From: Diadema antillarum
Lineage: Eukaryota
NCBI RefSeq assembly: GCF_040938485.1
Contig: NW_027271656.1
Span: forward strand, 372,001 to 436,000
DNA: 64,000 nucleotides
Reading direction: 5' to 3'
Shown here one piece after another: positions 18,492 to 58,197 of the stretch (positions are counted from its first letter, which is position 1; the number at the start of each line of letters is the position of its first letter). Below the pieces are notes generated by a model. That model searched no databases and was not told the DNA's origin. It worked only from the letters and a program-made list of their open reading frames with translations. The translations under genes and the position numbers were made by a program.

Positions 18492-18764
<273 letters not shown>

Positions 18765-23626: not shown

Positions 23627-23728
23627 GCTGAAGCAGAGAAGCTTGAAGCTGAGAAGGTAATTCTGGCAGAAACAATGGTGGACACAGCACCAATAATTCA
23701 GGATGCGGCTCCGACAGTTGATGAACAG
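23627..23728 (+). CDS. LETM1: LETM1 coding exon 10
   Basis: gttag|GCT...CAG|gttagt. Encodes AEAEKLEAEKVILAETMVDTAPIIQDAAPTVDEQ. An internal in-frame donor exists at 23656. Confidence 0.85.
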
Positions 23729-24359
23729 GTTAGTTCACTTTTTGTGCCCACCTCATCTTCTGCAGCACATCTACAATGATTCCATGAAGGATTTGATTTA
23801 AGAACATATTCATTCATTGATTTAGTTTTCACAAAACAAGCTGTGATATGTCCATTTTTGTAATTATTGTTGACTCAATGATTTAGTGAATAGACAGAGA
23901 TTGTGCTTATTTTTTCATCATGATTGACTTAGTTTCTGTCCCTTTCAATATAGTAGTCATTAATATGTAGATATTGCTGGAATATTGATTTGTTTTCCAC
24001 TTTTATGACTGAATACATGCATACGTGTACAAATATATTGTGTGATAATAGATGACACTGGATAGAATAAAAAATGCGCGTGATTTTCAAGTACAGAAGC
24101 AGGGTTTATAAGGACAAGCTAGTGTGTTATTCCCTTTGTTTAAGCATGTGGATGCAGTGCTTAACTGTATTATGTATCAAAAAGATTTTTTTTTTTTTTC
24201 TGTTAAAGTGTATGTCATTAAAAAGATCATATGAAAGACCACATTTTGTATTACTTTTATAATTTGTAGGTTCCATTGTTGGTTTAAATTTTGTTGCTAT
24301 CTTTTAAAGACTTTGGGTTACTTAATGGACTGTGTGGATGATTGCATCACTGTCTGCAG

Positions 24360-24485
24360 GTAACCAAAGAGGACCTGGCGGACTTGGGTGAAGTCTTGAC
24401 GGAGATCGCAAAGGAGAAGGACGCCCTCTTTGAGGAGAAGGAAGATCTGGAGGAACTGAAAGAGGATGTGGAAGAGTACAAGGAG
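24360..24485 (+). CDS. LETM1: LETM1 coding exon 11
   Basis: ctgcag|GTA...GAG|gtgaga. Encodes VTKEDLADLGEVL...EEKEDLEELKEDVEEYKE. Confidence 0.92.
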
Positions 24486-25049
24486 GTGAGAACCATCTGT
24501 GGTCTACTCTGAATGAATGGATGAAAGGGTAAAGGGTCTGCAGGGAGGTTCAGAAAGGAAACCAAACCAAATTGTCCATGGTATGTTTGTCCATGTAGGG
24601 CTACAAATGAAATATGTGATATTTTCACTTTTGGTGTTAGCATTTTTATGTGTGTTTGTTGGTAGGGTGGGGTGTCATTTCTTTTTGTAACTCTCAGGCA
24701 ATTTTGGGTGACAAAGTTTTTGTGTAAGCCTTTGCAGTGGAAAGCCATTCAGAGTAATGCTGTATTGAATGGTTATTGCATCTTTAAACTCTCAGGCAAC
24801 TTTGGGGACTACATGTAAGTCATTGTGTGGGCCTGTGTAGTGAGAGGCGTTATGAGAAATGCTATATTAGATTGAAGCTGAGCGGAAGGGTGTATGCAGC
24901 AGCAATTATTGTCTTGTTGCTTCGTTAATCAAGGACATCCTTTCAGTGATTGTTTTTATTGACCTTGAATTTTCTGTTGAACATCTGTATATATAGTTTC
25001 TGTGCATTCTCTCATTGTCTTTTTTGGGTCTTTATTAACACTTGACCAG

Positions 25050-25136
25050 GATTTGGAAGACTTGAAACGTGAGACGGAAGAACTGGACATGCCAGTCCTG
25101 ATGGAGTCCAAGTCTTCAGTGCGACTCGGCAAACAG
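25050..25136 (+). CDS. LETM1: LETM1 coding exon 12
   Basis: gaccag|GAT...CAG|gtaaat. Encodes DLEDLKRETEELDMPVLMESKSSVRLGKQ. Confidence 0.92.
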
Positions 25137-25995
25137 GTAAATGCTTGTCTTATTACAGAAATGGCATTAAAGAAAGGCTTCCAATATTACATCATGTATG
25201 ACAAAATGCACAAAAGCATTCATTATGAATTTGTTTTGTGGCTTTTTAAACACACACACAAAACTTACCAAAGTACTGAAGCATTTCATTGAAAAGGCAT
25301 ATTTGCATAAGACTGCTTATTGAGACATTCAAATTAAAGCAGTTTAAATCTAGTCAATATGATTATCATTCTTGGCAGCAAAGATATACCAATAAAGCTG
25401 TTTGTATCTACAGCATGAATCGAATAAATGTTTAGACTGTAACTGATATGTGATAAGAAGAATTTTAAATGCATGTACTGTACACATGCACCCTAACTGA
25501 CAGAATATGTGTATTACAAATAATTATTATCCCTTTCTGTGCCAGTGAGTCAAATGCTCCCAAATTTAAACACACGGCTATGGATGAGAGATTAAAGGCA
25601 TAATTGATCATTTGCAGATGAAACAAAAACCCAGCAGTAGTCCTTTAAAATAGTCATAAAATGTGAGTAAGGGATGCAAATAACCACTGTAAATATTTGA
25701 ATATGTGCAATTGTTGTTAAGTATTGTTAAATATATACAAATTGTGAACAATAGTTATTGTAAGAATGTGTCCAAACTAAACCATCTTCAGTTACGGTTT
25801 ATTGAGGAAAATACTGATATCTCCTTATATTTTAGGCTTTATTCCAAAAATTTCATATGGTAGGATGTTTTGTGATATACATATGCGTCATATGTGATAT
25901 TTTGAACATTTTTTAAATCACTGCTACCAAAGATAAGCAGTACCTTTAATGTAGCACACATAGAGTTGAAAAGTTACGCTTCTTGTGTGCTTTAG

Positions 25996-26189
25996 GTGGG
26001 TCGTATGATGAACCGTCTGGAGAGCATCGTGTCCCAGCTGGAGACCCAGAGAGAGACACTCCATGAGGAGCACTCCATGCTCCAGGAAGACCTGGAGGCC
26101 AGGAAGAAAGAGCTGGATGATGCCGACTCATCGGAGGAAGAGAGGGATGCCCTCGAGGCCAAGATGCAGCAGAGCATCTCCAAGAAAAA
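25996..26189 (+). CDS. LETM1: LETM1 coding exon 13
   Basis: tttag|GTG...AA|gtaatc (phase 2). Encodes VGRMMNRLESIVSQLE...QQSISKK. Confidence 0.9.
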
Positions 26190-26517
26190 GTAATCCTCTC
26201 ATTCCTTCATTCCCTTATTCGACAGCTGATATCAAGCCATGTATAAAGTGTTATCACACTTGAGAAATGTATTCTTCTGGAACAAGGAAATACTTCTAGT
26301 ACCCATTTGGGAAATTTAATTTTTGCTTGTGTCTCTTACAATGTTTGTTTTTCAAGAAAGTTTACAAATTTCTTTGTGAGCACATCTCAAAATTCTCTCA
26401 ACCTCTGCCCCCCCCCCCCAAAAAAAAAAGTGATATAGCAAAACTGAAATATGCTTTTGAGTGATACAGACAACAAAAACCAAAGATTTTGTTTGTTTGT
26501 TTTGTAGAATTTCATAA

Positions 26518-26728
26518 TACTGTAAAATGAGGAATGTTCATGTGCATTTTAATTTCGTGAATTTCGCGAGAGCCAAGATTCGTGAAATTGAAATGCACGC
26601 GAAAGTTCTTGTCTACACTATATGCATTGAATGTTTGAGGCAACTCGCGAAAATTTCATGCCGCAAAAAAGGCCGTCGGCTCCAATTTGCAAAAATACCA
26701 TGCTGCGAAAATATTGAGTTTTACAGTA
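26518..26728. mobile_element. TACTGTA-terminated MITE
   Basis: TACTGTAAAA ... TTTTACAGTA, with internal (T)CGCGAAA repeats. Confidence 0.75.
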
Positions 26729-27036
26729 TATGAATGATGCAAGCTGGTGTAACTTTGGTTGTCTTTGATATTGCCTAGAAAGGATGGAATCTGTAGTGCA
26801 GCATAGTGGAGTATGTATCCAGGAACAAAGTTTACTTCTTCAATGTCCAAATGTAAATCTTAATTGGGAATGTACATATTAACTATCTAGCACAGTTTCC
26901 TTTGCTATAACACTGCAACTCTACTCCCGCTTCTCCTGCCGCATAAAATCCATCTGGCAGTGATGCCTCGTAAATTAGGGAAACCACCCTCAAATTCTTG
27001 TTCTCTTCGTCTTCCATTGATAATGTACACATCCAG

Positions 27037-27178
27037 GAAAAATATGATCCGCGTTGAGGAGCTGCTGGATGCCATGCGAAAGTTTGGCAAGGTTTCCGAT
27101 GAGGAGAAGCTAGAGCGGATTGCCGATGTCCTGGACGAAGACCATGATGGTGCTATTCAACTGCAAGATGTCCTCAAG
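27037..27178 (+). CDS. LETM1: LETM1 coding exon 14 (EF-hand)
   Basis: atccag|G...AAG|gttggt. Encodes KNMIRVEELLDAM...LDEDHDGAIQLQDVLK. Confidence 0.93.
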
Positions 27179-27275
27179 GTTGGTGTAACCCCAGAGAGAA
27201 AAAAATTGTCTTCTGGAAATTCTATTCATTGCAAACTGAGGATCTATGTCTGTTGTGAAAATTGTGGAATTTTAA

Positions 27276-27360
27276 CCTGTTGAGGATGCACTGATTTTGC
27301 TGTAACACGCATTTCTCATAGACACTTGCCAGAGTGTTCTTAGGACTTGTCTTGAACGGG
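27276..27360. mobile_element. 85-bp piggyBac-type MITE, copy 1
   Basis: ttaa|CCTGTTGAGG ... TTGAACGGG|ttaa. Homologous to 37652-37736 and 57481-57565. Confidence 0.8.
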
Positions 27361-27803
27361 TTAAAAGTCATTTGTCATTGTCATGTCTATTTTCTATTCA
27401 AATATGTGTTCTCATAAAATTTGGACTTCTGTGTTGACTGGGTATGGTTGAGAATGCTTAAAGTGATTACATAAGAAGGTGAAGCTTTTGTAAACACAGA
27501 GTGTAATATTTAAGGGCTGTCATGATTGAGATAGTAGTTTATATGTCAGAGATAGATATGGCTTTAAGGGGACATACAAAACTTACTTGCTGTAAAGATT
27601 GTTATTAACATATTGATGAATATTAACAAAATCTATGTATAATTTCAAGTATATCCCAAAGTTTGGTGAATGTTTTTGTTTCAGTGTGTTTTCTTGTACC
27701 TGAAAGACTTTTTTTTTTTTCGTCTCTACACTGTACATGTTGTCAATTATAACTGAAATAAATGTTATGTGTTGAGTGTTGTGTCTCTTAATTTACCCAA
27801 TTG

Positions 27804-28028
27804 TACTGTTATATGTCATATATTTTGTGAGATATTTATTTTTACGAATTTAGTGAGTCAGGTGCTAGACTCAAATTCAAAACCATGCGAACATGAATAT
27901 GATGTGCATGCATACATTTCTCCATTCAGTGCTGTACTCCACGATCGTGAATTTAACCACTCACAGAAATTGTCAGGAAGTCCCAATTTGCAAAAAATAA
28001 GACTGCTGAATATAGGGCGTATACAGTA
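27804..28028. mobile_element. TACTGT...ACAGTA MITE
   Basis: Shares catacatttctccattcagt..gtactccac..atcg..aatttaacc with 34474-34715. Confidence 0.65.
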
Positions 28029-28098
28029 TTCTAAAGGATACTTAATACTACCACAGTGTACATGTAAAGAGATGTTGTCAACTGTGTTTTTCCTGTAG

Positions 28099-28278
28099 GT
28101 GATAGAGACTATCGCCAAGGAAGACATCGCTCTGAACACGAGGCAGATAGGAGAGGTCATGGACCTCCTCTGTCGGGAGGAGATCATGGAGGAACTCGAG
28201 AAGGACATGGAGCGGGAGGAGAAGCTCATCATGGCGGAGAAAACCGACGAGGCCGAGGCGGGGAAGAGTTCGTCGTAG
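28099..28278 (+). CDS. LETM1: LETM1 terminal coding exon 15
   Basis: cctgtag|GTG ATA GAG...TCG TAG. Encodes VIETIAKEDIALNTRQIGEVMDLLCREE...GKSSS then stop. Confidence 0.92.
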   Translation: MIETIAKEDIALNTRQIGEVMDLLCREEIMEELEKDMEREEKLIMAEKTDEAEAGKSSS

Positions 28279-28776
28279 TCCGTCCGTTGCCATGGCGATC
28301 TGAGGGATGCTGCAAGTGTTCAGAGGCCTGTGGCCTGCCTCGATGGCACCAGGCCTTTCACATGTCAGCTGCAGCTCACCATAGAGAGCATCTCTGCCCA
28401 TTGAGACAGTGACCCCAAATGGTTGCCATAGTAACAGCATCATTTTGTGACATAGATGCAGAGAGGTGAAATGAGTTGTGAGTCATTCAGTGTCACTAAT
28501 GGTATAGTCACTATTTTCCCATGACTGAGTGACAATCGGTTCTTGCAGACTGCACGGAATGCACTTTGCATGTTCAGGTGTGGGGCTATGGTGCAATTGA
28601 ATCTTGAAGAACTGTCACTAGTGCTGCATATTTTACTCAAACAAACCCTTGTCTTTGTGCAGAATCATGACGGAAGCATCTTTCCCAAACCGTTATGTTT
28701 TCTTTAGAAACAACCATATTAAACATTGAAATGGCAAATTCATAGAGAATTCTGTCTACTGTCTGTGTTAAATAGA

Positions 28777-44010: not shown

Positions 44011-44202
44011 TTAGAATCCCTGATATACGGGCTCCTCGGTGGATCTTTGGTGGGAGGAGAGTAGCCTCTCCTCCTCCTCTGTCCGTGCCCTCAGGTAGTG
44101 CTTTCTGGACCGGTACCTCTCTAAGAGAATGAAGACTGCCACAAGGGTCACCACCCCGATGGCAGCGACAAGGCAGTAGAACCCAATGGTTGGCACACAT
44201 TT
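44011..44202 (-). CDS. Cys-rich membrane protein terminal exon (TM helix and cytoplasmic tail)
   Basis: ttctccag|AAA TGT. Encodes KCVPTIGFYCLVAAIGVVTLVAVFILLERYRSRKHYLRARTEEEERLLSSHQRSTEEPVYQGF then stop. Confidence 0.92.
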   Translation of the reverse strand, partial: KCVPTIGFYCLVAAIGVVTLVAVFILLERYRSRKHYLRARTEEEERLLSSHQRSTEEPVYQGF

Positions 44203-44962
44203 CTGGAGAAAACAAAATAAAACCCATGCACATAAGAGTCTTTTGCAGTACATCTTCCTTTTTTGGGACTCTCCAATACCATTTGACATATTCAGTTAAA
44301 AGACTATTAAACAGCCCTTACTTTCCTTTGTTCACTGATTGGCAAGCATGGTGGAGTGCATTCTTTGCCAAGTGGCTCTGAGGCTTGGGAACTAATTGTC
44401 GATGAATTATCATTACCTAATCCCCCTAATCTCTATTCATGTCACCATGGCCACCCTGTTGGACTGATGCACACTGCTTTACCCGAGTGGGCTTGCTTTT
44501 TTTAAAACTAGGTCAAGTTTGGATGGATTACTGAATGTCAGTGAAAACAATTTGGTGAGTTACAGTAAAGTGCTTGGCACATCAGGAGTTAATCACTTCA
44601 ATTTCTTATTGACATGTTCCTATGATTCGGCAACAAACTTCCTGAATCAAACTTCCTCAATCAGAACTAAATCAATTTCCGAACAGGATTCCACTTTCAT
44701 TTTGAAAATATGAACAAAAATAGTGCGTCTTTGTTTTTGAGGTTTCCTTTTATTCTTATTAATATAAAAAATGCCACACAGATGCTTCCCTTTGACTCAT
44801 TTTTCCTGTATCGTTATATCCCAATGAATATATCACACTGCTTGATTTGATGGTTAAAAATCTCTCTGTCAAAAAGTTGTCACAATTGTCACAATTCTTT
44901 ACAACAGCGATCTAGGATGTGCCATGATGCATATTGAACATCTCTGTCCGGACGAATCTCAC

Positions 44963-45070
44963 CTTGTTTTTCTCGCTGAAGAGCGGGCCGCAAGTTTGGT
45001 ACCTTGGCTCAAAGCTACCCGCAGGGCACGAGGCTTCCGGAGGGCAGGGCTTTGGGTCGCATGAGAAACA
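44963..45070 (-). CDS. Cys-rich membrane protein coding exon 7
   Basis: ctgacag|TGT...AAG|gtgaga. Encodes CFSCDPKPCPPEASCPAGSFEPRYQTCGPLFSEKNK. Confidence 0.9.
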
Positions 45071-45158
45071 CTGTCAGAGGAAGCACAATATAAAACAATG
45101 TGTGAAATTGATGACATTCATTTGTTTCACTTACTTAGCCCAATACTAATGGTATCCC

Positions 45159-45355
45159 AGGTCTGCCAACATTCCCACATCCAAATTAGGGAGATTCCAC
45201 ACAGCAATCAGGGAGATATCTGTGTGTTACATGCATTTCAATGGGTGAAAATAATTCCCAAATCAGGGAGATTTTAATATTCTCTTATTCAGACATGAAC
45301 AGATTTTGGCATATTCAGGAAGACTCCTGCAGAATCAGGGAGACTTGGCAGCTCT
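45159..45355. mobile_element. hAT-like MITE (8-bp TSD GGTATCCC)
   Basis: ggtatccc|AGGTCTGCCAAC ... CTTGGCAGCTCT|ggtatccc, with internal AATCAGGGAGA repeats. Confidence 0.8.
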
Positions 45356-45539
45356 GGTATCCCTGCCCCAACCCTGCGTGCCTAGGCCAAGACAAATTGC
45401 CAGTACTTACAAATCTTATCATTGGACTTTGATACAGATTGCTATGAATTGTAGAGTCATGTACAACACACAAGCATATTTGAACTAACGGCAGTCTATC
45501 TACAAGGGAAGAGCACAAAAGCAAATCATCACTCTAGTA

Positions 45540-45980
45540 ACTACCTCCGCAAAGGAAGGAGGTTATATTTTCATCACCGTTGGTTTGTTTGTTTGTTTGT
45601 TTGTTTGTTTGTTTGTTTGTGTGCAAAATAACTCAAAAAGCTGTAAATCGATTTGAATGAAAATTGCAGGAAAAGTTGATAATGACACAAGAAACAGATT
45701 ATGAAATTTTGCTAGTGATCCAGGAATCTTTAGGGATTTTTGAAGGATATCTTATATTTTGGCAGATAGGGTCAATGACCTTGGGAGTTCAAGCTGCACG
45801 CATTTGAGGTATGCATCCGTGCTCTAAAGCGTTTGCTCTACTTGGGAGAGATGCCGCATAGCTGGAAGCTGATGACGTAACAAAGGGCTTCTATACTGGG
45901 ATATTTTCAGCATACAAGTGTGTATGGGTGAAAATGAACTACTTAGCAGAGGTCTGCCCTCTCTGAATGCTTTTCTAGTT
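45540..45980 (+). mobile_element. HINE-like element (TACCTCCGC..GGAGGTTAT, (GTTT)n, ...CAGAGGTCTGCCCTCT..TTCTAGTT)
   Basis: Terminal motifs and a (TTTG)n tract. An inverted homologue lies at 47265-47720. Confidence 0.8.
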
Positions 45981-46424
45981 GTGTATATTGCTCATAAAAA
46001 AAAGGAAAGGTACATGGCATTGCACTGGTTTAGAGCACAACAACAATTTGGCTGTAGTTAACCACAAAGTACGGCAGTGGAAAAAGGCCTTCTTCAGGAA
46101 AGTCAAAGTACAGTCCTTGAAAGACAACAAAAGAATAAAAACAGTACTAACTAAAATAATGAAATAACTGTTTAAACAAGAGAGAATTGGATGCTACAAG
46201 AGATAAAATGTTAAAATGCTTCATTATAATTTTCTGGAAAACCCTCCATTGCTAAATGAAACTACAAGAAAGAAGTACACACTAAGTATGCCACCATGCT
46301 TCATACAATTTACTTGTAAAACTTCCTTTGCTAAAGTAGAGTACTCTTGACTTCTCTGAAGAGAATAAAAAATTAAAAACTGATGAGAATGAGAATGAGA
46401 ATGTTCATATTTTACTTGACTCAC

Positions 46425-46611
46425 CGCACAGTAGAAGCCTTCGGGACACAGAAGGCAGGTCAGCTGCCCCGCCTGGGTCTGGTAGTAGCCCTTGGCACAC
46501 TGGCTACAGAGACTGGTTGAGGCCAGGGGCTTGCTGAAGCCGGGCTCGCACTGGGTACAATTGTATGCTGCTCGGTGCCTGGACTCTCTCCCAGCGGGAC
46601 ACTCGTCACAC
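46425..46611 (-). CDS. Cys-rich membrane protein coding exon 6
   Basis: cacgtag|GTG...GCG|gtgagt. Encodes CDECPAGRESRHRAAYNCTQCEPG...CLLCPEGFYCA. Confidence 0.92.
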
Positions 46612-47264
46612 CTACGTGGCGAAAACACCTTCATTAATCATGTGTGTCAAAAGAGGAGATTTAAAACAAAAAAGAATGTGCATAAAAGAATAACCACTAG
46701 GCCCCGCCCCTTCTTCCTACCCCTGCAGGTGCCAATGCAAACCGTCACTGTCACTGCCTAAAAGAAACTGTATTCTTTTTCTACTGGAGTATGATGTTTT
46801 TGTTACGGGAGTAGCATGTGAGGTCATATTCAATTTGCCACATGCATGAAATTCCATAAAATCTGTTCTTTTTTTTTAATATGAACTTTAAATGACAGAA
46901 TACATTTCTTCTTTTCTTTTATTCAGGGGTCTATAGATAAACACATTTACAAAGATTTTAATTATGGTGCAGGTACGATTGAATAACTACTTACAGATGG
47001 GAAATTAAACTCTGACTTATATTACAGTAAATGGAGGAAGTTCCCATGTGACAACACAGAATTGCTACTTTGAGTTATTCACAACTTTACAAAAATCATA
47101 TCTTTTTCAGTGTCATCAGTGAATTTGCTCAAAATGTCACTGTCCAGTTCCTCTCATTTCCCCTTAAGATGAGAAATTAATCTTTCTTTGTCCCCCTAGA
47201 GACACATTGTCAAGATATCTTACAAGAAAGACAAGACAAATGGGAAAAATAAAACAATTGCAAA

Positions 47265-47720
47265 CTAGAAAAGCACTCTGAGAGCGCAGACCTCCGCCAA
47301 GCAGCTACTTTCCAATGATGATCTTACTCTTCCATAGAGATCAGTGATTTCCATCCATACGTATGCATGCTGAAAAATCATAAATCCTCAGCTGCGCGGC
47401 GCCTCGCCCTAGCAGAAACAAGAGCATGCACTTTAGTGCGCGTATGAAAACCTCAAAACTGCGCAGCTTGAACTCTCAAGTTCACTGACCCTTCCTGCCA
47501 AAATATCGAAAATCCATCATAAAATCCATAAAAATTTCCAGATCACTACCAAAATTTAATCATCTGTTCCTTGTGTCATTCTCAACCTTCCCTGTAAGTT
47601 TCAGCCAAATCCGTGCACGACTTTTTGAGTTATTTTGCACACGGACAAACAAACTAACAAACTAACTAACAAACAAACCAACGGTAACGAAAACATAACC
47701 TCCCTTGGCAGGGGTAATAA
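47265..47720 (-). mobile_element. HINE-like element, inverted relative to 45540-45980
   Basis: AACTAGAAAAGCACTCTGAGAGCGCAGACCTCCGCC ... AAACATAACCTCCCTTGGCAGGGGTAAT. Confidence 0.85.
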
Positions 47721-49428
47721 AAATTAAACATTGGTGATGTGTATGTCATACACATTCATGCACTGAGCCATTTTAGCTCTGAAAGATTTCTTCTACTTGT
47801 GCACCCATATAAAGTGAGAGAGCTACAACTTTGGTTTTCAAAAGAAATAATGACTGGTGTTTAATCTAGCTACACAATTATTTGTCAAATCCAAGGCCAG
47901 TCAAGGCTTTAACAAACAGCAGGAATTAGCCCGCTGTAGTCTCTGACCATTAACTAGCATGAAAGGTCAGTGGCAGTCACGTGAACAGACCCTATGACTG
48001 TGTGACAAAGGACACCACGTGTCATTTCATTGTCTTTTGAACACAATGGGAGAAAAGCATTTGCAGGAGCTTACAATAAAAGGAGAGAGAGAGAGATCAA
48101 TCTCGAGCAGACAGCAAAAACAAACAAAACAAACAAAAATTTAACCCATCCATTGCCAAAGACTCTGGACAGTGTGTACAATGCTATGGGATTTTCTGTG
48201 CCAATCAGCACTGAAAGCACAGGAAAGATTCACAGACGAGGAGGTACATGCACATTCAGGTGTAAGGAAGCTGACTGGTGGCTAGATTACTAAACTTCCT
48301 GACATGTGACATATGTGCATGGTTCTTCCAACTTCTCAGTACCATGTCACAAAGTATCATCAGAGAAACAATAACAAACTGCACTGAGAGTCATACATTT
48401 TCCAACTAACCCAGTACCTAACTGGTAGACAATGTATTATTTTGTACTTCAGCCAACAAGGTAAATCTACATCCTTCAAAACTTTATAAATTTTCCCATC
48501 AATAGCTGAAGTAAAACAGACACAGTACTCACTACAAAAGCCAGTTCAGAGTTGCAGTCTGAGCATGTCCCTACAAAGGCCACTGCAGACCGTCTCTTCT
48601 TTGAAGTCAAACTTAATTCATTCAATATTCTGTATGGCCAACAACATTTTGTTTGTTTGTTTTTTTAACACACACACACACATACAATGTCACATGCATA
48701 TACACTGTATATTGATTTGAAAGAAAAAAATAATAAAATGAATTACGGCCCTTTCAAAGAGGGAGTAAACCACTTGCTACAATTACAGGATATAAATTGC
48801 TATGATGTGAAACAGTGGAAACCATTTCAATCATGATATGGATAGAAGCTTCTTTACTCAGCATAGATACTGGTATGTGAATCATGCAATGGCATTATCA
48901 TATCTTCATTACTTACACACCCAAAGGCATTTATTGGGTGTGTACGTAACTCCTGCCCACAAAAAGAAAAATAAAATCAAAGGAAACGAACACAAATTAT
49001 CTCTCATACTTGCAATTTCTTTTGATATTGAATGCCAGGTTGATGTCAACATGAAACCCATGCCATACTTAGAAACCAAACCTTCAGCGCAGAATCTAGA
49101 AACAAGACAATGTCCACGGCACTGCTAACATACTGTAAAGCGAGGAGACACACTAATCCCCACTGCTCATTTGTTAATTTTCTTAATCTTTGCTCCTTTT
49201 CCATAAAAATCCACTTCAAGTTCTTCCAAAAATGTAACAGACTCACGGCATGAAGAAACCCAAACCAAAGTATTGCTTGACTGTTGATTTGAGAGGCCAG
49301 CTAGATAGATAGAGAAATATAAAATAGAGTGATAAATACATGTCGATCTAGATACACATGATAGATCTGTGTCATATACCCTATATAAAAATGATATATG
49401 ATCCCTCTTTAATAGGAAAGAGACTTAC

Positions 49429-49561
49429 GCTGAGCAGCCAGTGCGGTTGCAGTATGACCCAGCGTAGCACGGCTGACACTCTGTCTCACCAGAGAACCAC
49501 TGGAAGTAACCTATTGGGCAGCTAGTGCAGTTCACATCCCCTGGCATACTGCTGACTTTAC
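49429..49561 (-). CDS. Cys-rich membrane protein coding exon 5
   Basis: gagacag|GTA...GC|gtaagt. Encodes GKVSSMPGDVNCTSCPIGYFQWFSGETECQPCYAGSYCNRTGCS. Confidence 0.92.
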
Positions 49562-49639
49562 CTGTCTCAGACACACATACAATGAAAATACATGAGATCA
49601 GGAACACGCATGAATCGAATAATAATAATAATCATAATA

Positions 49640-49827
49640 CAGAGGGAACTCAGTATAACAAGATCCTGGGGACCAAGACAATTTATTCTTTCTATCAGAT
49701 ATTTTGTTATACCAGTTGTCAATAGTCAATACAATACAAAGGAAATACATTTATTGAAACAAGAAATTAGTTTATATCAGGTATTTTGTTATATCAGATA
49801 GAATCACTTTATACCAAGTTTCTACTG
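49640..49827. mobile_element. Tc1/pogo-type MITE (TA TSD)
   Basis: ta|CAGAGGGAACTCAGTATAA ... TTATACCAAGTTTCTACTG|ta. Confidence 0.6.
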
Positions 49828-50301
49828 TACTGCATTTATAAAGCACATAATCAACACATGCTTCTCTATGCACTGTACAATTCAGAATATATATTTTGCT
49901 TACATACTATGTACAGTAGGTAAATTGTAGACAAAAGGGTCCATATTCACGAAGGTGGTTTATATCAAGTCCATGGTTTATCAAATGCAAATTCTGTGTG
50001 CGTAAATGCGTTTGAGAGATTGCACATGCCAAAAGATATCTAATACCTAGTAATAAACATGTGAAAGGTACGCTTACTTCACACTTATTTTAGTCCATGG
50101 ATTGAATCTAAACCATCTGATCATTTTACTTTTAAACCATCTTTGTTGTGAATACAAGCCAAAGAGTTGTGAATGTCAAAAATTCATGATCATGAACATT
50201 TAATTGACTTACTTAAGAATTCTGATGCTTTCAAAATGTCATCCTTACATGCTGAAGGATAATCACAACAAAAAGCCTACATACCATGAAAAGATAATCT
50301 G

Positions 50302-50424
50302 GGCCCTGTTTTATGAAGATTATAATTGATTATATAGTTGATTTCTGTCATATTTCTATGGCAACCTGTATGGTAAGGGAATTTACAATTGATTATTCTA
50401 AATATCGCTTGATAAAACGGGGCC
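50302..50424. mobile_element. Short MITE with GGCCC TIRs and CTG TSD
   Basis: ctg|GGCCCTGTTTTATGAAG ... CTTGATAAAACGGGGCC|ctg (15/17 TIR match). Confidence 0.7.
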
Positions 50425-53400
50425 CTGGACTTATAACACTCAAGTTACTCAGCATTCCTTGATAACCAGTGACAGAAGAGTATTACTTATGTTAAACAAA
50501 TAATTTTTTTGTTACTTAAATCTGAGTAAAACAAAATCATGCAATACATGCACTGTGTATCTGTAATTCCTCACTATTCAAAAAAGTATATGCACCCACC
50601 ATAACAAGATATTTTCATATTGACCTAAAACCAAAGACAATTAGGTGTCCCCCCCCCCCCCCCCCAACACACACACACAAAAAGATCTGTTTAAAATAAA
50701 AATTAACATTTTCATACAGTCATATTCGGACTATGTACATTAAAAGAAAGAGACGAGTATGCAACTGTTGTATAGAAATACAAGTTACTATCATGGTAAC
50801 ACTATCAGCATTGACCAGTAGACCAATGCCCTCATGTTGATACTCTTAACCCTTGTGACATGAAAAATGTATCTACGAATGCATACTTAGTACAAGTACA
50901 AGGGCTTTAACCACAGCAATGTTTATACCCTGGTGTCATAGAAATCATATAGACTACAGCACAAAATTTTGTCAGCAATAAAGAGCAATGAAACTGTTTA
51001 CACAGTTTGATCAATACACAGCAATAATTCTGAATTGGCCAAGTTTGGTACCTTGGACTTTCCACAGTGGATAATGAACTTGAAATTTCACTGCAGTTTT
51101 TTTCTTATTTTGTTTGTGCTCATGAAGTGGTATCTTTTTTTCTCCTTCATGCTGTAACTACAGTACCATATCGACGTGACAGGTTTTCACAAAATAAGTT
51201 TTATCTATTAGTCATGTTTGTGAATAATAAATATCTTGATACTAGACCTTCCAAAAGAATGGTTTGCTTGTAAACAAACAGTAAGAAAAAAATGGGGGAT
51301 GTATTCCCAAGGAAATACTTCAAGGAATGAACATTTCTTCGAATTCTATGCTTAAGACACATTTTATAATGAAAAAAGAAACACTCTGTTTTGATCAACC
51401 AGAGATCGAAACTCACATATGTAATGACTGTTCGATACACTGTCTTCTTCATTTCCGTTCTCTCTACCTGCATTATATTTCTACATCAATTTCACCCATA
51501 AAGTTACTTGCTCATCAAATCTATATTTGGCTGAGGAAAAAAAATATCTTAAGGCTGTTTTGTAAGATCAATTTAATCATCCACATTTCAATAATGCCTA
51601 GTGATGTTCCAAACAAGGAATTAACTGTTTCACCACAATATTTCTTTGTCCTGTTTTGGGTCCTGTTTGTTTTTTCCACAATGGTGTTGATTTTCTGTAA
51701 TGCTGGTATTTGTGGATTTGATCTCAGCATATTTTTTATAAATGTTACATTAAAAATAAGTTTCAACAATTTTTAAAATGTTTTGGATATAATACAAACT
51801 TACAACCTTCCAGTAAATTCTTTGAAATGACTTGGTCAAAAGTCAAGACATAACAAGTGAGGATACCTACATCTTTCATAACCATCAGGAACTGAGTGTA
51901 CAAATATGTCAAATTGAAAAAAAAAAAATGTGTTAAGTTCACAGTTTAGAAAACTGAAATTAGAATTATGTGTATTTACCTTTTTTTCATGACAGAAATA
52001 TATGGTGCTGCAAATTTGCTTCATATACAACTATCATAAAATCCCAAGTCAACCATTCAGTCCTTCATCAATACACTTGTATGTAACCTGTTCAAGAAGA
52101 TGTGACCCCAACAGTTTGTGGGTTATCAATGCTTACAATTTTTATTTCATTCCACCATAATAGTGAGCACAGATATGCTTGAAGGTCACTGTGTTTAGAC
52201 CTGTCTTGTTACTTGCTTTGAGAAGAGTGGCCTGAGACTCATAAAAATGGTGTCAGTTCCAGGTATCCTTGATGACGATCGGGGATTCTCACAATATATG
52301 CTACAATTGTACAGTAGTCTCTCCATTTTGGAGAAAAAAAAAAATCTTCGTGGAAATTCTTTTCATGTGTGCTGTGGGGTCATGCTGGCAATACATTTGG
52401 GTTGAGATTATTTTGCCAGTCTTCATAGGGAATTTTACCTGAAATATCATCTGAATTCAGTGCATGCACATAAACTCGTTTTTAAGGCACAAGTTATGTT
52501 TGAGAAAATTTAGAAAAGGCATTCTGAAAGAGGTAAGTGAAGCGATCTTTCATTATGCTAGCAAGATAGAAACAACTGGAACCCTCTTAATATATAATTT
52601 TTATACATGTATAGTTCGACTGCTAAGAAATCACAAATTGCTGAAGTCTTCTAGTCTAGTGACGGCAGCACATGGGTTTATCAAAACAAACAACTATTCA
52701 TAAATTTTGTAACAACTGCTTATTTTCCTCTGACTTCCCTGATGTGTTTGACTATTATTTCTGCATGAACTGAATCCACATTTAAATGTTTGTGATAAAT
52801 TTCCAAAAAATCATACAGAAATCACAGAATATATGGCAAAATGCGACAGAAATCATAAATATAAGTATAGTCACCCATTAAATCTAGTATTGGTGAGGAC
52901 CTTGCAGAAACAAATACACACAGAGATGTCATTACACCAATACACACAATGTAAAATTGCATATCAATGATAACTAAAAGAGTAGCAGAGAAGAAGGAGA
53001 GATACAGATAACAAACAAACAAAAGTGGAATGAGTTCATTAAGTATTCTCATCTGCACAAGGCTCTCTAGACAAACAGCCTTTGTCTTGTGTTACGTCAC
53101 TTCACACAAATGTCATTTAAAGAGAACATATCGCAAAGTCAGGAAATTCATCAATTACTAATAAACATCGATGTATGATTATTAAGAGCAATTTTGTCAA
53201 AACCTTCCTGATACTGAATGATGGAGTAGTTTGGGAATTTCATGTTACAATTGCAAGTGAGACAGTAACAACTTATAAAAGGATATGAATTTGACATTTG
53301 TTTTGACAGAGATTTGTACACTAATCACACACATTTTGATTCCTTATTCCTTAGTTGGGATGTAATTTCATGGCATGGGATCAAGCAAACAATATAAAAA

Positions 53401-53689
53401 TGAAATGCAGAAACTACAGCACTGTGCATCGACTAATTCCCCTTTCAAGATCCAATGCACTGCACAGGAAAATTACACCAGTGACACACACAAAAAAAGT
53501 TAAAGCATACGACATAAGAAGTCAAACTTGGCTCAACTTGATCACATGAGTGTCATACGAGTTCACTTCAAGAAAGGACATATAAGTAAGCCTACACTCA
53601 TGCAAACATGTACACTCACACACACACACACAACGAACCTCAAGAGATAAACATCTCACAAGGCTAGTTCATTACATGTATAACCTCAC

Positions 53690-53796
53690 CTGGTGGACAC
53701 GGAGTGCAGTATTTGCTGCCAGACACATTGGCAAATGTTCCTGCCTCACATTCGGTACACTGGGGACTTCCTGGCACACTGCAGGAAGAGGAACCA
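53690..53796 (-). CDS. Cys-rich membrane protein coding exon 4
   Basis: atgccag|TGG...CAG|gtgagg, phase 2 to 1. Encodes SGSSSCSVPGSPQCTECEAGTFANVSGSKYCTPCPP. Confidence 0.9.
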
Positions 53797-55051
53797 CTGG
53801 CATTTATACAAAATATACAGAATATGACATGGAATACCACTAAATGGTATAATCAATGGGGCCATTACTCATTTATCATACAGAAAGACATAGTAGACTT
53901 TTTGTTTTGTTTTGTTTCATGGGTTGTGAATTCTTTGTTCTTGTGGGGGGGGGGTTCTTTACTGGTATTTGTTTGTTTGTTTGCTATTTTGGTTGTGTGT
54001 GCAACCAATTTTGTTTCATGCAAAAATATTCTGAAATTCCTCTTGAATGTGTACATGACAACCCAGGTTCAAATCAGCAATAGGTAAAAGAAATTGTACA
54101 TGACTCAAAACAGAGACTGATAAGTCACTAATTAATATCATAATTCATATCTTCACGTAGCTCTAACTCATCATAACCTTTTCTCTTTCTATAGAGCATT
54201 TGGCCTTTATAAAACCAAGAAGAAATATGCAGATGACCTTTGATTGAATCAGAGCCAAACATGATGACATTATGTGTTTTGCTTGTGCCTTTCCTACCCT
54301 GCAAGAGTCAACAAAGAAAGCCCTCGGTGCGTAGCACTCTTGTGAGCTTAAAAGGTAACTTCAAACTTTGACAGTTTCGCTGTGGTATCACTCGAGAGTA
54401 TGAAAGTAACTTAATTGTAACTACCTCTTAAAGGGCAGTACACACAGTAATTACTCTGTACCTACAATGTAAAGTGTCAAAAGGCATCCCAGCAGAACAA
54501 TACTTAGCTGCATTACTAGATAGAAAACTAACAGTTTTTATGTCGCATCAACTTGTTACGACCTTGAGTGAACAATCAGGCTATTATTGCCTCTGTCATA
54601 AGCAAACACTTGAATTTGTCTTTATTACCTCATATTGTATCTTAATATGAATTGGCTGTGTGAATTCTGGAGCTTGAGATCTCTAAAATTTAAACAGTTA
54701 GGAGCCTTGACAGTCACCTGTACCACTTAAGTCAGTTTTGCAGCTGTCACCCTTGAAAATGATTCCTGCCGCAGTCAGTCAAATGACCACTTTTCTGATA
54801 TTGATAGGCAATGCGTTCAAATTAAATGATTTTATATCGCTTGTGTTCAATAGTTTATTTCTACTTCAAAGGTGGAGATAACCTAATTCAGACAAAAACT
54901 GTCATTGTCCATAGTAATGAATATGGAATTATATAACCAGTAGACAGCAAAACAAAGCAGGGATGCTATTCCTTGTCAGACATTTCCTCCTTGCTTGCTG
55001 GGATATCAGTGTACAATTGTTGACAGCTCTTCTTGGCGTAAATCCACTTAC

Positions 55052-55445
55052 CTACTGGCCGACCCTGGCTGGCAAAGCTCACACCCGGTCGCTGCTAAGT
55101 CCGGCTGACTCTGACCAACTGGACACTTTGTGCAGTTGTGGCTACCCGTGTGGTTGGAGAAGCTTCCACGGGGGCAAGTGAAGCACTTTGAGAGGCCCGT
55201 CTTGTTAGAGAAAAAGCCCTCTTCGCAAATGTCGCAGGTGGCGTTACCCTCCCCGGGCTGGGCATACCCCTTGGGACATGGCGTGCAGCTCATGGCTGAT
55301 GTGGTATTTGAAAATGAACCTTTTGGACACAAGAGGCACTCCGTTTGGCCGGATTCAGGCTGGTACTCGCCTTCACCGCATTGTATACAGAGTTCTTCAT
55401 TTGTACAGGAACCACTCTTGTCACAGCACGCACAGTCTTTCTCAC
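55052..55445 (-). CDS. Cys-rich membrane protein coding exon 3
   Basis: tattcag|GTG...AG|gtaagt. Contains tandem 17-aa units such as CIQCGEGEYQPESGQTE, CLLCPKGSFSNTTSAMS and CTPCPKG. Confidence 0.93.
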
Positions 55446-56890
55446 CTGAATAGTACCATGAGCATGCAAAAAAATACAAACATATTTTTTTTCTTTTAAA
55501 TTGAGAAAAGACCTTGGACAATACCTACTCATAACAGCTGTATAAATTCACTTATATATCAATGACACATATATACAAGTGTATCATTTCATCATCAACT
55601 CCAAATTTTGAAATTCCACCAAGTATTTTCATATACCGTATAGAATTCACTCATGACAATATCTTATAGTAGTGCTGTAAACAAACAAACTGCCTCGCTA
55701 CTGTACATTGCCTTTTGATTTGATTTGTATTCAAATGTGAACTTTGCCAGGGCTGTTTGATGAACTCCGCCTCCAAAACTGATAATGCTTGGGTCCTCAC
55801 ATACCCAACACTGCATGAGTAATATTCCATGGGCCATACTAATCCTAAAAGCACCATGGTGTTTACACAGCACCCTGTGCACACCCTCTACCAACCAGAG
55901 TACTGTAACATTTGAGGCCAAAGGCCAAGAGTCCTCGAACTCAATCTCAGCTGTGATACAATTGTACAATGATTCACTGGCCACTTATGACATGATTTTG
56001 TACCCAATTCACGATTACACAATGGCAATATTAGCAAAGTCAAGAATAAAGTTGCATATTTTTTTTCTTGAACACAGGTGAAACCATTGGCTGAAGATGT
56101 TTTTTTTTCCTCTCCTTGAGCACATCGATGATTGCCACCTGTGGCATTCTAAAATGCACTTTCACCAGTATCTTTTAGCACATTAATTTACTGGTGCAAA
56201 GAAGACATAATTCATACAACCATGACATACAGCACTTGACTGCCTGTAGCACACAATGCACTGTTGAGAATCCATATTCCATATGACTTATCAGGTTAAC
56301 CTTGGTTGGGCATGGCCCAGGGCTATTAAAATTTGCTGTCGGGCCACCAAACTTTACTGATCATACCTTTTGGTGGCCTGATCAGGCAACTAAGATTCAA
56401 TGGAGTGAGTCCCAGTTTTCCAAAAATATACATTTCAATGGAATCGATGAATTCTTGGAATTCTTTTTTGCTGGCAAACTTTAAACAGTAATTTGGTCAT
56501 AGTAAGCTACATTTGTATATCCCCCTCCTCAAAAGAAAGTAAAATGATTTAACAGAAAAATATATCGTTGCTGGGGCGACAAGACCTCGTATCTACAAAA
56601 TGTCAAATGTTCAGGAGAGCCCAAAAACATGGCGGCCAGAGCACTGTGGCGAATGGGATAGCCTTTCGTTCGGACACGCCGTGGTAGCTTCATTTTTGGA
56701 GTAAGACAGTTCGGATTTGGACAGGACATCACTTAACCTATTATTTGACCATTAATCCAAAGAAGTCATTTTCACCAAAATTGCAGATACAATGTCTTGT
56801 CACCCCAGTGGCAATAATGTATGTGGCATGACACAAGTGCATGCCAATTTCTGATTTGACTGCTGCACCTGTACAACAATAAGTACTCAC

Positions 56891-57064
56891 CTAAATTGGC
56901 AACACTCCCAGGATCACAGGCAGAACACTCCTGGGTGAAAGAAGAACAGTTGAATTCCAATACCAGGGAGCCATCGGGTAGGAGGCTGCCAGAATTGTGG
57001 ATGCTTCTCCTCAGTCGAGCCTCTGTGAACCACGACGTCCAAGACAGTGACCAAGAAGATCCAA
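56891..57064 (-). CDS. Cys-rich membrane protein coding exon 2
   Basis: gtcaccag|TTG...TAG|gtgagt. Encodes VGSSWSLSWTSWFTEARLRRSIHNSG...CSACDPGSVANL. Confidence 0.85.
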
Positions 57065-57149
57065 CTGGTGACAAAAATTCAGGGACATATCAAGCAAAGA
57101 GAAACTTCTTGAACACATAACATTGGTGGAGATGAGGATTAAGCTTTTG

Positions 57150-57440
57150 ACTCTTTGCGAGATACCAAGAAACCAATGTGAAATGTTACAGAGCATACCA
57201 ATCTAAGAGGAATTCAAAATTTATTTGATGAAAACTGGTTTTGAAATGGCCGAGATATCCAAAAACAAAGTAAACCACATTGATACTATTACTAATAAAA
57301 GGTGGGTCCCACCTTTTACAATGTTTTAGTATCAGTTTGTTTTGGATATATCTCAACCATTCCAAAACCAATTGCCATCAAATAAATGTTGAATTCCTCT
57401 TGGAATTACACGCTTCTTCATATATAATGAGACATTTCAC
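57150..57440. mobile_element. Internal palindromic fragment of the Kolobok-like family seen at 5985-6366
   Basis: Shared sequence tttgatgaaaa..ggtttt..aaatg..gagatatccaaaaa..aataaaagg..cctttt. Confidence 0.6.
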
Positions 57441-57480
57441 ATTATCTCACACAAAAAAAAAGAGTATTTTCTTAGTTTAA

Positions 57481-57565
57481 CCCATTGAGGATGGAATGAT
57501 TTTGCTACAACACGCATTTCCCATAGACACCTGCCCGAGTATATTCGGGACTCGTTTTCAACGGG
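57481..57565. mobile_element. 85-bp piggyBac-type MITE, copy 3
   Basis: ttaa|CCCATTGAGG ... TTCAACGGG|ttaa. Confidence 0.85.
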
Positions 57566-58106
57566 TTAATGGATGTAGGCAAAGTTTGCATTTGAAAATG
57601 GATTCACAAGTACAATTGTAGGTCTCCATTGAAACAGAAATCTTCACAGTGGAAACTTGTTTGCACGCATAAAAACAAGAAGTATTCATGGGTGGTAAAC
57701 ATCCCTCATAGAAAGTGATACAGATCACTTGATCTTATTAAGGAAATACTTCATTACTAGTTTACATTACATTCAGGCTAGACCATACTGATTGTGACAA
57801 GTGTGTAGCAAAGTTTCTAAGAAGTGAAAGAGCCTACACGGAGACCACTGTAGGACAGAAACTTGCCTATAGAACCTCGACCTTATTGCTACACAATCAG
57901 AGTCAAACTTGAAATTGTAACAACACTTCATTATCTAATTTCCTTTCTTTTTGCTTCTAGACATAGTTTATTTAAACCTACATTATGTATGTATGTAACA
58001 TACGGTGTACTTTTGTACTTGATATGACTACAATGGAAACAATGGAACATATATCAATACTATGTAGAAAGGATGAAGCGAAGATAGACAGGATTAATTT
58101 CATTAC

Positions 58107-58197
58107 CTAGCATCAGCAGGAGGGCAGTCTTCAAGATCATCTTGTACCAAGCTCCACTGTACACATGATATCCACTATCCTTCCACTCCTCAGCCAT
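58107..58197 (-). CDS. Cys-rich membrane protein coding exon 1 (MAEEWKDSGYHVYSGAWYKMILKTALLLML)
   Basis: Exon acceptor at 58256-58258 (ttccacag). An in-frame upstream TGA fixes the start. Donor TAG|gtaatg, phase 1. A second ATG at 58140 begins a typical signal peptide. Confidence 0.75.

What the first reader, a model, noticed from the sequence alone, without database searches (positions are those of the whole stretch)
44011..58197. Orphan Cys-rich type I receptor-like protein made almost entirely of CxxCxxG repeats
Seen: an intact 8-exon ORF (about 461 aa) with a signal peptide, about 16 mostly 17-residue CxxCxxG units (47 ectodomain Cys, 10 N-X-S/T sequons), one TM helix and a 36-aa tail. 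No CUB, EGF, kinase or protease domain is apparent. Established: this repeat type (GCC2/GCC3, Ephrin_rec_like) is normally an accessory module in SCUBE, SVEP1 and ELAPOR1/KIAA1324 proteins. Inference: a stand-alone, heavily glycosylated rod of these repeats with endosomal sorting signals may be an uncharacterised cargo or endocytic receptor family, likely mis-named by automated annotation. I do not recognise it as a named gene.
Basis: partly seen in the sequence, partly recalled or inferred. Interest (0 to 1): 0.72.

Follow-up and report, generated by a model that had tools for sequence, protein, structure and literature searches.

The report
Sea-urchin cysteine-repeat rod membrane protein
This is a real, intact, single-copy sea-urchin gene for a membrane protein whose outer part is a stiff rod of 16 small cysteine hairpins; other sea urchins have it under four different wrong automatic names, nobody has studied it, and its conserved tail suggests it shuttles between the cell surface and endosomes.

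Summary
On the minus strand, 58197-44011, eight GT-AG exons encode a 455-aa type I membrane protein. It has a signal peptide and a conserved about 45-aa head. Sixteen CxxCxxG units follow, fifteen of them at exactly 17-residue spacing. There are 46 ectodomain Cys, 10 N-X-S/T sequons, one TM helix and a 36-aa tail.

It is not an orphan. Strongylocentrotus purpuratus XP_030841845.1 and two Lytechinus proteins align collinearly at about 61% identity. They share the intron positions and the convergent LETM1 neighbour.

Only Ephrin_rec_like (PF07699) is found. Membership of SCUBE, SVEP1, ELAPOR, Giardia VSP and TNFR fails. A confident fold of exon 3 is closest to the Chlamydomonas mastigoneme rod, then ELAPOR1.

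The gene is under purifying selection. An acidic dileucine and a C-terminal YxxF in the tail are conserved in all three species. Endocytic or endosomal cycling is therefore my best, still inferred, mechanism.

No RNA runs were listed, so splicing is unconfirmed. No relatives outside sea urchins were found, but the tools reach poorly there. Interest is modest.

The parts
58107..58197 (-). Exon 1: start codon at 58197 (an alternative in-frame ATG lies at 58140) and the hydrophobic signal-peptide core. It ends in phase 1 at a GT donor.
   Evidence: an in-frame stop lies 10 codons upstream; there is an A at -3 for both ATGs. The sequence is not alignable to the orthologues' exon 1, but the layout is the same, with an N-extension followed by a hydrophobic core.
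56891..57064 (-). Exon 2: the conserved Cys-free head (SW.SWF.E.RL.RSIHNS), followed by FNCSSF and the first CxxCxxG unit.
   Evidence: 65% identical to S. purpuratus aa 44-90. Three-way conservation is shown. There is no Pfam family. The only other copy in the genome is the allelic contig.
55052..55445 (-). Exon 3: the conserved DCACC motif and seven and a half 17-residue CxxCxxG hairpin units, with five sequons.
   Evidence: PF07699 at 5.5e-19, 68 bits against a cutoff of 23. 65% identical to the orthologues. AlphaFold2 pLDDT 89. Best solved-structure match is the mastigoneme Mst1 rod, TM 0.77, rmsd 1.8 Å.
53690..53778 (-). Exon 4: two repeat units.
49429..49561 (-). Exon 5: two and a half repeat units.
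   Evidence: PF07699 at 1.5e-05. 58% identical to S. purpuratus aa 253-295.
46425..46611 (-). Exon 6: the last four repeat units.
   Evidence: PF07699 at 4.1e-10. 66% identical to S. purpuratus aa 297-357.
44963..45070 (-). Exon 7 (36 aa, phase 0/0): a membrane-proximal Cys/Pro-rich module with no CxxCxxG unit.
   Evidence: Found from the orthologue. 67% identical to S. purpuratus aa 359-394, which is also one 108-nt exon there. No Pfam family.
44011..44202 (-). Exon 8: juxtamembrane Cys, TM helix, 36-aa cytosolic tail and the stop codon (44013-44011).
   Evidence: The only other copy in the genome is the allelic contig.
44122..44190 (-). Transmembrane helix (aa about 397-419), followed by a basic RYRSRK stretch. 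This gives a type I topology by the positive-inside rule.
   Evidence: 23-residue hydrophobic run. The topology is inferred.
44059..44076 (-). Acidic dileucine motif of the [DE]xxxLL type (aa 435-440) in the tail.
   Evidence: The E...LL pattern is kept in S. purpuratus and L. pictus. Its function as an adaptor-binding signal is inferred from established knowledge of such motifs.
44014..44025 (-). YQGF at the extreme C-terminus (a YxxF tyrosine motif), preceded by conserved EP[VI].
   Evidence: EP[VI]Y[QE]GF-COOH is present in all three species. The function is inferred.

Best explanation
Shown: this is a single-copy, intact, selectively maintained sea-urchin gene encoding a type I membrane glycoprotein. 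After the signal peptide comes a conserved, Cys-free head of about 45 residues. It sits on a disulfide-laddered, N-glycosylated rod of 16 seventeen-residue CxxCxxG beta-hairpin units (Ephrin_rec_like, TNFR-like fold). A short Cys/Pro-rich membrane-proximal module follows, then one TM helix and a 36-residue tail. It is the orthologue of S. purpuratus XP_030841845.1 and the Lytechinus proteins that databases mis-name as trophozoite antigen, SCUBE2 or SVEP1-like.

Inferred: the rigid rod holds the conserved head well away from the membrane as a binding site. The tail's conserved acidic dileucine and C-terminal YxxF recruit clathrin adaptors (AP complexes). The protein would then be internalised and cycle between the plasma membrane or TGN and endosomes or lysosome-related organelles. 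On this reading it acts as a cargo or endocytic receptor, or as a vesicle tether. That would make it a minimal, MRH-less functional analogue of ELAPOR1, not a member of that family.
For: Gene model and counts.

Domains: only PF07699 is above its cutoff, in exons 3-6 and nine stretches in the orthologues.

Orthology: a 457-aa S. purpuratus protein was the only similar-sized, high-identity hit among 1.84 billion representatives. The exon-by-exon alignment is collinear at 50-67% identity, 61% overall. There are eight coding exons with the same intron positions. LETM1 lies convergent downstream in both genomes.

Selection: against S. purpuratus, pN is 0.25 and pS 0.82 (saturated). The two haplotypes differ at 15 synonymous and 6 non-synonymous codons, while their introns differ by 2.5-7%; the ORF and all splice sites are intact in both. 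Of 50 Cys columns, 46 are invariant in three species, and by my reading of the same three-way alignment 9 of the 10 sequons are conserved.

Fold: the exon-3 model has pLDDT 89 and pTM 0.76. Its best solved match is the rod of Chlamydomonas mastigoneme Mst1 (TM 0.77, rmsd 1.8 Å), followed by ELAPOR1 cryo-EM chains and TNFR ectodomains. The sequence search of the PDB agrees.

Tail: RYR.R..Y, E...LL and EP[VI]Y[QE]GF-COOH are conserved in all three species, although the tail is the least conserved exon overall.

ELAPOR1 is a type I protein with the same repeat type, reported as a sorting receptor and vesicle tether (PMC12337314).
Against: No localisation, ligand or expression data exist for this gene or its orthologues. 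No RNA run was listed and no paper was found. Short linear motifs such as [DE]xxxLL and YxxF occur often by chance, and conservation across three sea urchins is suggestive only. The YxxF lies 32 residues from the membrane, unlike the very short tails of LAMP-type lysosomal proteins. There is no MRH or other known cargo-binding domain. The full-length model of the orthologue was poor (pLDDT 46), so the head and the membrane-proximal module have no reliable fold.
Confidence: 0.5

Rival explanations
1. It is a resident cell-surface receptor or adhesion/spacer molecule. The TNFR-like rod or the conserved head binds an extracellular ligand or a partner on another cell, and the tail tyrosine serves as a phosphorylation or docking site, not a sorting signal.
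For: Fold matches to TNFR-family ectodomains (4-1BB, CD40, RANK, DR6) and to the EphB2 and CaSR Cys-rich domains. The head is conserved. The conserved C-terminal Tyr sits in an acidic context (EEP.Y). An S/T-x-E-E stretch resembling a TRAF-binding motif is present in the window protein and in L. pictus.
Against: TNFR_c6 is far below its Pfam cutoff (16.5 against 29.4 bits). TM-scores to TNFRs are only 0.26-0.32. There is no death domain or kinase. The TRAF-like stretch is not kept in S. purpuratus. A conserved acidic dileucine is more typical of sorting than of signalling.
Confidence: 0.25
2. It is mainly a structural glycocalyx or extracellular-coat component: a stiff glycosylated rod that is displayed or shed, by analogy with the mastigoneme rods built from the same repeat.
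For: The best solved structural match is the Mst1 filament rod. Sequons are dense and conserved. The repeat register is extremely regular.
Against: Mst1 is about 2000 aa long, with other domains that mediate polymerisation. This protein is small and membrane-anchored, and it has a conserved cytosolic tail, which a purely structural ectodomain would not need.
Confidence: 0.12
3. It is not a functional stand-alone gene. It would be a prediction artefact, a pseudogene, or a fragment of a larger SCUBE/SVEP1/ELAPOR-type gene whose other exons lie outside the model.
For: No RNA evidence could be obtained. Exon 1 is not alignable between species.
Against: The ORF is intact in two haplotypes and three species, with the same eight exons. 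Non-synonymous divergence is well below synonymous. An in-frame stop lies just upstream of the ATG. The flanking genes in S. purpuratus are EXOSC1 and LETM1, with no further Cys-repeat, CUB, EGF or sushi exons between them. No further CxxCxxG-bearing open frame of this type is present anywhere else in the 64-kb window.
Confidence: 0.04

Closest known systems
Echinoid predicted proteins: S. purpuratus XP_030841845.1 ('major surface trophozoite antigen 11'), L. pictus XP_054765849 ('SCUBE2', later 'major surface-labeled trophozoite antigen 417-like') and XP_041477291.1 ('SVEP1-like')
   Same: Orthologues. The length is similar (457-464 against 455 aa). They share the head, the 17-residue repeat register, the membrane-proximal module, the TM helix and the tail motifs. 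The eight coding exons and the LETM1 neighbour are also the same.
   Different: About 61% identity. Exon 1 (N-extension and signal peptide) is not alignable. The window protein has a 5-residue insertion in the head. None of these proteins is characterised, and all their names are borrowed from unrelated families.
ELAPOR1/ELAPOR2 (KIAA1324; endosome/lysosome-associated apoptosis and autophagy regulator)
   Same: An animal type I membrane protein whose ectodomain contains Ephrin_rec_like/TNFR-like Cys repeats, with a short cytosolic tail. [quoted passage not shown] It is a Foldseek hit at E 5e-4, and PF23091 gives a sub-threshold hit.
   Different: ELAPOR1 is about 1000 aa and has an M6P-binding (MRH) domain. 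The window protein is 455 aa with repeats only. PF23091 scores 29.6 bits against a cutoff of 33.2. The TM-score is only 0.37 because the rods bend differently. This is not an orthologue.
Chlamydomonas mastigoneme protein Mst1 (PDB 8tx1, 8wa2, 9b4h)
   Same: The same repeat type. It is the best sequence hit in the PDB (4e-27) and the best structural hit (TM 0.77, rmsd 1.8 Å over 128 columns). This shows that such repeats build a stiff rod.
   Different: An algal, roughly 2000-aa extracellular filament protein with other domains and hydroxyproline-rich helices. It shares none of the head, TM or tail, so it is a fold analogue only.
SCUBE1-3 and SVEP1
   Same: They contain PF07699 repeats as accessory modules, which is the source of two of the automatic names.
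   Different: They are defined by EGF-Ca plus CUB domains (SCUBE) or by sushi, VWA and pentraxin domains (SVEP1). None of these is present here.
Giardia variant-specific surface proteins (VSP, PF03302)
   Same: CxxC-rich type I surface proteins, the source of the 'trophozoite antigen' names.
   Different: PF03302 scores 14-18 bits against a cutoff of 31.4. The protein ends in YQGF, not in the conserved VSP C-terminal pentapeptide (the latter from my own knowledge).

Membership tests
Ephrin_rec_like (PF07699, GCC2/GCC3-type) repeat superfamily | Match to the Pfam model above its gathering score | tested here: met
   68.1 bits against 23.1 in exon 3. Exons 4, 5 and 6 are also above the cutoff. 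The orthologues score 104-113 bits in nine stretches.
Ephrin_rec_like (PF07699, GCC2/GCC3-type) repeat superfamily | Beta-hairpin, disulfide-laddered rod fold | tested here: met
   The exon-3 model has pLDDT 89. It superposes on the Mst1 repeat rod at TM 0.77, rmsd 1.8 Å. ESM Atlas neighbours are all PF07699 clusters at TM 0.79-0.85.
Echinoid orthologue group of XP_030841845.1 | Collinear full-length similarity including the unique head and tail | tested here: met
   Exons 2-8 align in order to aa 44-457 at 50-67% identity.
Echinoid orthologue group of XP_030841845.1 | Shared intron positions and gene neighbourhood; single copy | tested here: met
   Eight coding exons with matching boundaries. 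LETM1 is convergent downstream. The head and tail exons occur only here and on the allelic contig C373.
ELAPOR1/2 | MRH (M6P-binding) domain and a roughly 1000-aa ectodomain | tested here: not met
   No MRH or other non-repeat Pfam family in any exon or in the orthologues. Length is 455 aa.
ELAPOR1/2 | PF23091 TNFR_ELAPOR1_6th above its cutoff | tested here: not met
   29.6 bits against a cutoff of 33.2; 21.7-28.1 bits in the orthologues.
SCUBE | EGF-Ca repeats and a C-terminal CUB domain | tested here: not met
   No EGF_CA or CUB hit at E up to 1.
SVEP1 | Sushi, VWA, pentraxin and EGF domains | tested here: not met
   None found.
Giardia VSP (PF03302) | Match to the VSP model above its cutoff | tested here: not met
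   17.7 and 14.2 bits against a cutoff of 31.4.
TNF receptor superfamily | TNFR_c6 (PF00020) modules above cutoff; a death domain or TRAF motif in the tail | tested here: not met
   16.5 bits against 29.4. TM-score to TNFR structures is 0.26-0.32. There is no death domain, and the TRAF-like stretch is not conserved in S. purpuratus.
Adaptor-sorted endosomal/lysosomal membrane proteins (functional class) | [DE]xxxL[LI] and/or YxxPhi motif in the cytosolic tail, conserved among orthologues | tested here: met
   Both motifs are present and conserved in three species.
Adaptor-sorted endosomal/lysosomal membrane proteins (functional class) | Demonstrated adaptor binding and endosomal localisation | not testable with these tools
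   This needs cell biology. No data were found.

The most novel reading that the evidence does not exclude
An uncharacterised, so far echinoid-only family of minimal ELAPOR-like receptors. A conserved N-terminal head on a rigid 16-hairpin stalk would capture a luminal or extracellular ligand, or pair head-to-head with itself. The adaptor motifs in the tail would route it to endosomes or lysosome-related organelles, for example pigment, cortical or coelomocyte granules. This would give sea urchins a lineage-specific sorting or tethering receptor.
Probability: 0.2. Interest if true: 0.5.

Novelty: new variant of a known kind. Interest (0 to 1): 0.3.

Why it matters
If the inference holds, this is a compact, experimentally tractable example of what a bare Ephrin_rec_like rod does in an animal membrane protein. 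That repeat is so far known in animals only as an accessory module. The gene would also give sea-urchin cell biology a candidate lineage-restricted sorting or tethering receptor. On the practical side, the result corrects four misleading database names for one orthologue group. It also fixes the gene model, including the 36-aa exon 7 and the choice of exon-4 acceptor. It does not bear on any long-standing open question.

Tried and rejected
1. RNA evidence. The look-up of sequencing runs on 53690-57064 listed no RNA run, so read laying could not be used and the junctions, the start codon and the exon-4 acceptor remain unconfirmed.

2. The big protein search with exon 3. Its list was dominated by giant multi-repeat proteins whose scores add up over repeats. 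Only one similar-sized, high-identity hit (P0132) was usable, and weaker orthologues in other classes would fall below the 150 rows shown.

3. Word searches with the orthologue's unique head (aa 40-112) and C-terminal part (aa 358-457). They found only S. purpuratus and L. pictus. This is weak evidence of absence elsewhere, because the tool needs shared 5-residue words.

4. The ESM Atlas look-up named similar-sized stand-alone clusters in molluscs and chordates. It gives no sequences, so homology of head and tail could not be tested.

5. Full-length AlphaFold2 of the S. purpuratus orthologue with a 2-row alignment gave pLDDT 46. It was not used for fold search.

6. MAFFT of the exon fragments with the orthologues (A1) misplaced the short exons among the repeats. 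I replaced it with exon-wise pairwise alignment.

7. Paper searches for the automatic names and accession numbers found nothing relevant, and a domain-name search found nothing on such animal proteins.

8. Pfam on two window exons of the LETM1 neighbour gave no LETM1 hit. Its identity rests on tblastx to the last exon of the S. purpuratus LETM1 gene and on my reading of the 14.5-kb exon.

9. EXOSC1, the upstream neighbour in S. purpuratus, was not found in the 5.8 kb of window upstream of the gene.

10. Rejected readings: SCUBE, SVEP1, ELAPOR, Giardia VSP and TNFR membership (see the membership tests); a recent paralogue for the second copy on contig C373, which is collinear at 93-97.5% identity through the introns and is therefore the other haplotype.

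11. The joined (spliced) protein was not sent to any search, family-scan or folding tool. All such calls used single exons by reference or the stored orthologue. The exons were concatenated only inside scripts: to count residues and motifs, and to compare the two haplotypes' coding sequences.

Full report
**What is there**

The finding lies on the minus strand. Stop-free segments carrying CxxCxxG motifs occur, apart from two isolated single-motif frames on the other strand (13.2 kb and 63.8 kb), only between 46.2 and 57.1 kb on that strand.

Choosing canonical AG/GT sites with compatible phases gave seven exons. The S. purpuratus orthologue then revealed an eighth, a 108-nt phase-0 exon at 45070-44963. 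The final model is:

| Exon | Window coordinates |
|---|---|
| 1 | 58197-58107 |
| 2 | 57064-56891 |
| 3 | 55445-55052 |
| 4 | 53778-53690 |
| 5 | 49561-49429 |
| 6 | 46611-46425 |
| 7 | 45070-44963 |
| 8 | 44202-44011 |

Every intron is GT-AG, and the 1368 nt encode 455 aa. I assembled the spliced product only inside scripts: to count features, and to compare the two haplotypes' coding sequences. Those calls used single exons by reference or the stored orthologue.

Counts:
- 16 CxxCxxG motifs, fifteen of them spaced exactly 17 residues apart (aa 108-346) and one at aa 77
- 47 Cys, of which 46 precede the membrane helix (an even number, so 23 disulfides are possible)
- 10 N-X-S/T sequons
- a 23-residue hydrophobic helix followed by a basic stretch
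- a 36-residue tail

An in-frame stop lies ten codons upstream of the first ATG. A second ATG at 58140 directly precedes the hydrophobic core, so the true start is open.

I prefer 53778. It keeps the 17-residue register and an even Cys count. Both orthologues lack any insertion there, and its pyrimidine tract is better.

**Domains**

Pfam finds only Ephrin_rec_like (PF07699) above its cutoff, in exons 3, 4, 5 and 6. The head (exon 2), the membrane-proximal module (exon 7) and the TM/tail exon match no family. NCD3G narrowly clears its cutoff in exon 3 (43.9 against 38.9 bits) on the same cysteine-rich stretch as PF07699, so I read it as overlap between related Cys-rich models; it is below cutoff in exons 4 and 6. 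TNFR_ELAPOR1_6th, TNFR_c6 and VSP all stay below their cutoffs.

**Relatives**

A full HMMER scan of 1.84 billion representatives with exon 3 gave 15,748 hits. The list is led by giant repeat proteins whose scores add up over many repeats. One hit stood out: P0132, 457 aa, 52% identical in five stretches.

P0132 is S. purpuratus XP_030841845.1, named "major surface trophozoite antigen 11". Its L. pictus counterpart was named "SCUBE2" and later "major surface-labeled trophozoite antigen 417-like". A third Lytechinus record is named "SVEP1-like".

Exons 2 to 8 of the window align in order, without gaps between them, to aa 44-457 of P0132 at 50-67% identity, 61% overall. The S. purpuratus gene has the same eight coding exons with matching boundaries, including the 108-nt exon 7.

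In S. purpuratus the gene lies between EXOSC1 and a convergent LETM1. In the window, the last LETM1 exon matches at 28.1-28.3 kb on the plus strand, again convergent. This is one-to-one orthology to an uncharacterised gene.

Notes from other agents of this scan call the genome Diadema antillarum. I did not verify this. A sea urchin outside the Strongylocentrotus/Lytechinus group does fit the 61% identity, against 72% between those two.

**Copy number**

In the window's own assembly, exon 3 has one further 100%-identical copy, on contig C373. That locus is collinear with the window over 17 kb at 93-97.5% identity, introns included. It is therefore the other haplotype of a heterozygous genome and not a paralogue. 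The head and tail exons occur nowhere else in the assembly.

**Selection**

The two haplotypes differ at 21 of 1368 coding bases: 15 synonymous and 6 non-synonymous codons. The ORF and every splice site are intact in both. Their introns differ by 2.5-7%.

Against S. purpuratus, the proportion of non-synonymous differences is 0.25, while synonymous sites are saturated at 0.82. Of 50 Cys columns, 46 are invariant in three species, and by my reading of that alignment nine of the ten sequons are conserved. The gene is clearly maintained by selection.

**Fold**

The full-length orthologue with a two-row alignment folded poorly (pLDDT 46). I then aligned exon 3 with 60 homologous repeat segments. 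That gave a confident model (pLDDT 89, pTM 0.76), a regular train of short beta-hairpins.

Foldseek against the PDB puts the Chlamydomonas mastigoneme protein Mst1 first (TM 0.77, rmsd 1.8 Å over 128 columns). ELAPOR1 cryo-EM chains come next, followed by TNF-receptor ectodomains and the CaSR and EphB2 Cys-rich domains. The sequence search of the PDB gives the same order. ESM Atlas neighbours are all Ephrin_rec_like clusters. I conclude that the ectodomain is a stiff, disulfide-laddered rod.

**How it probably works**

Architecture, orthology and selection are shown. The rest is inferred.

The tail is the least conserved exon, yet three blocks survive in all three species:
- a juxtamembrane RYR.R..Y
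- an acidic dileucine (E...LL)
- EP[VI]Y[QE]GF at the very C-terminus

From established knowledge of sorting signals, [DE]xxxL[LI] binds AP-complex hemicomplexes and YxxPhi binds their mu subunits. A C-terminal YxxPhi is typical of lysosomal membrane proteins such as the LAMPs.

My best reading, at about 0.5, is a cycling endocytic or endosomal receptor or tether that presents its conserved head on a rigid glycosylated stalk.

The rivals are:
- a resident surface receptor or adhesion molecule (0.25)
- a structural coat component (0.12)
- an artefact or gene fragment (0.04)

**What is known, and novelty**

The protein fails the defining tests for SCUBE, SVEP1, ELAPOR, Giardia VSP and TNFR. It is a member only of the broad Ephrin_rec_like repeat superfamily and of its own echinoid orthologue group.

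Searches with the unique head and tail found nothing outside sea urchins. A language-model look-up suggests similar-sized stand-alone repeat proteins in molluscs and chordates, which I could not retrieve. "Orphan" is therefore too strong; "uncharacterised, so far echinoid-only" is fair.

I found no paper on it. I class it as a new variant of a known kind, of modest interest (0.3).

**Limits**

No RNA run was listed, so the splice junctions, the start codon and the exon-4 acceptor rest on homology and consensus signals. No tool here searches other animal genomes.

Noticed in passing
window 45540-45980 and 47263-47703: Two copies of an interspersed repeat of about 430 nt, each carrying an (ACAAACAA)n-like tract, lie in inverted orientation on either side of exon 6 (78-84% complementary arms). 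The copy at 45539-45973 is missing from the other haplotype on contig C373, so it is an insertion polymorphism.
   Followed up: partly
window about 14500-28280, plus strand: A LETM1-like gene runs convergent to the finding. Its last coding exon (about 28099-28275) matches the last exon of the S. purpuratus LETM1 gene at 68% over 59 aa. The exon in 14499-15185 reads like the LETM1 N-terminal region, but Pfam gave no hit on either exon alone.
   Followed up: partly
G000 contigs C768 (window) and C373:636001-655000 (L012, L013): The assembly holds both haplotypes of this locus as separate contigs, 93-97.5% identical through the introns. Many other hits also come in near-identical pairs on different contigs (C218/C425, C319/C435, C19/C343/C396). 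Copy counts in this assembly are therefore roughly doubled.
   Followed up: partly
L004 (G000:C218:1860695-1864033) and L005 (C425:1121415-1124753): Uninterrupted open frames of 784 and 718 aa full of Ephrin_rec_like repeats, 30-38% identical to exon 3. They belong to a different, much larger repeat gene and its allelic twin.
   Followed up: no
window 55400-55443 (start of exon 3): An unusual DCACC cysteine cluster just before the regular repeats is invariant in all three sea urchins. It lies in the only poorly modelled part of the exon-3 structure (pLDDT below 50).
   Followed up: no
window 46380-46424: A short hexanucleotide-type microsatellite, which reads as His-Ser repeats in frame, starts a few bases after the exon-6 donor, inside the intron.
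   Followed up: no
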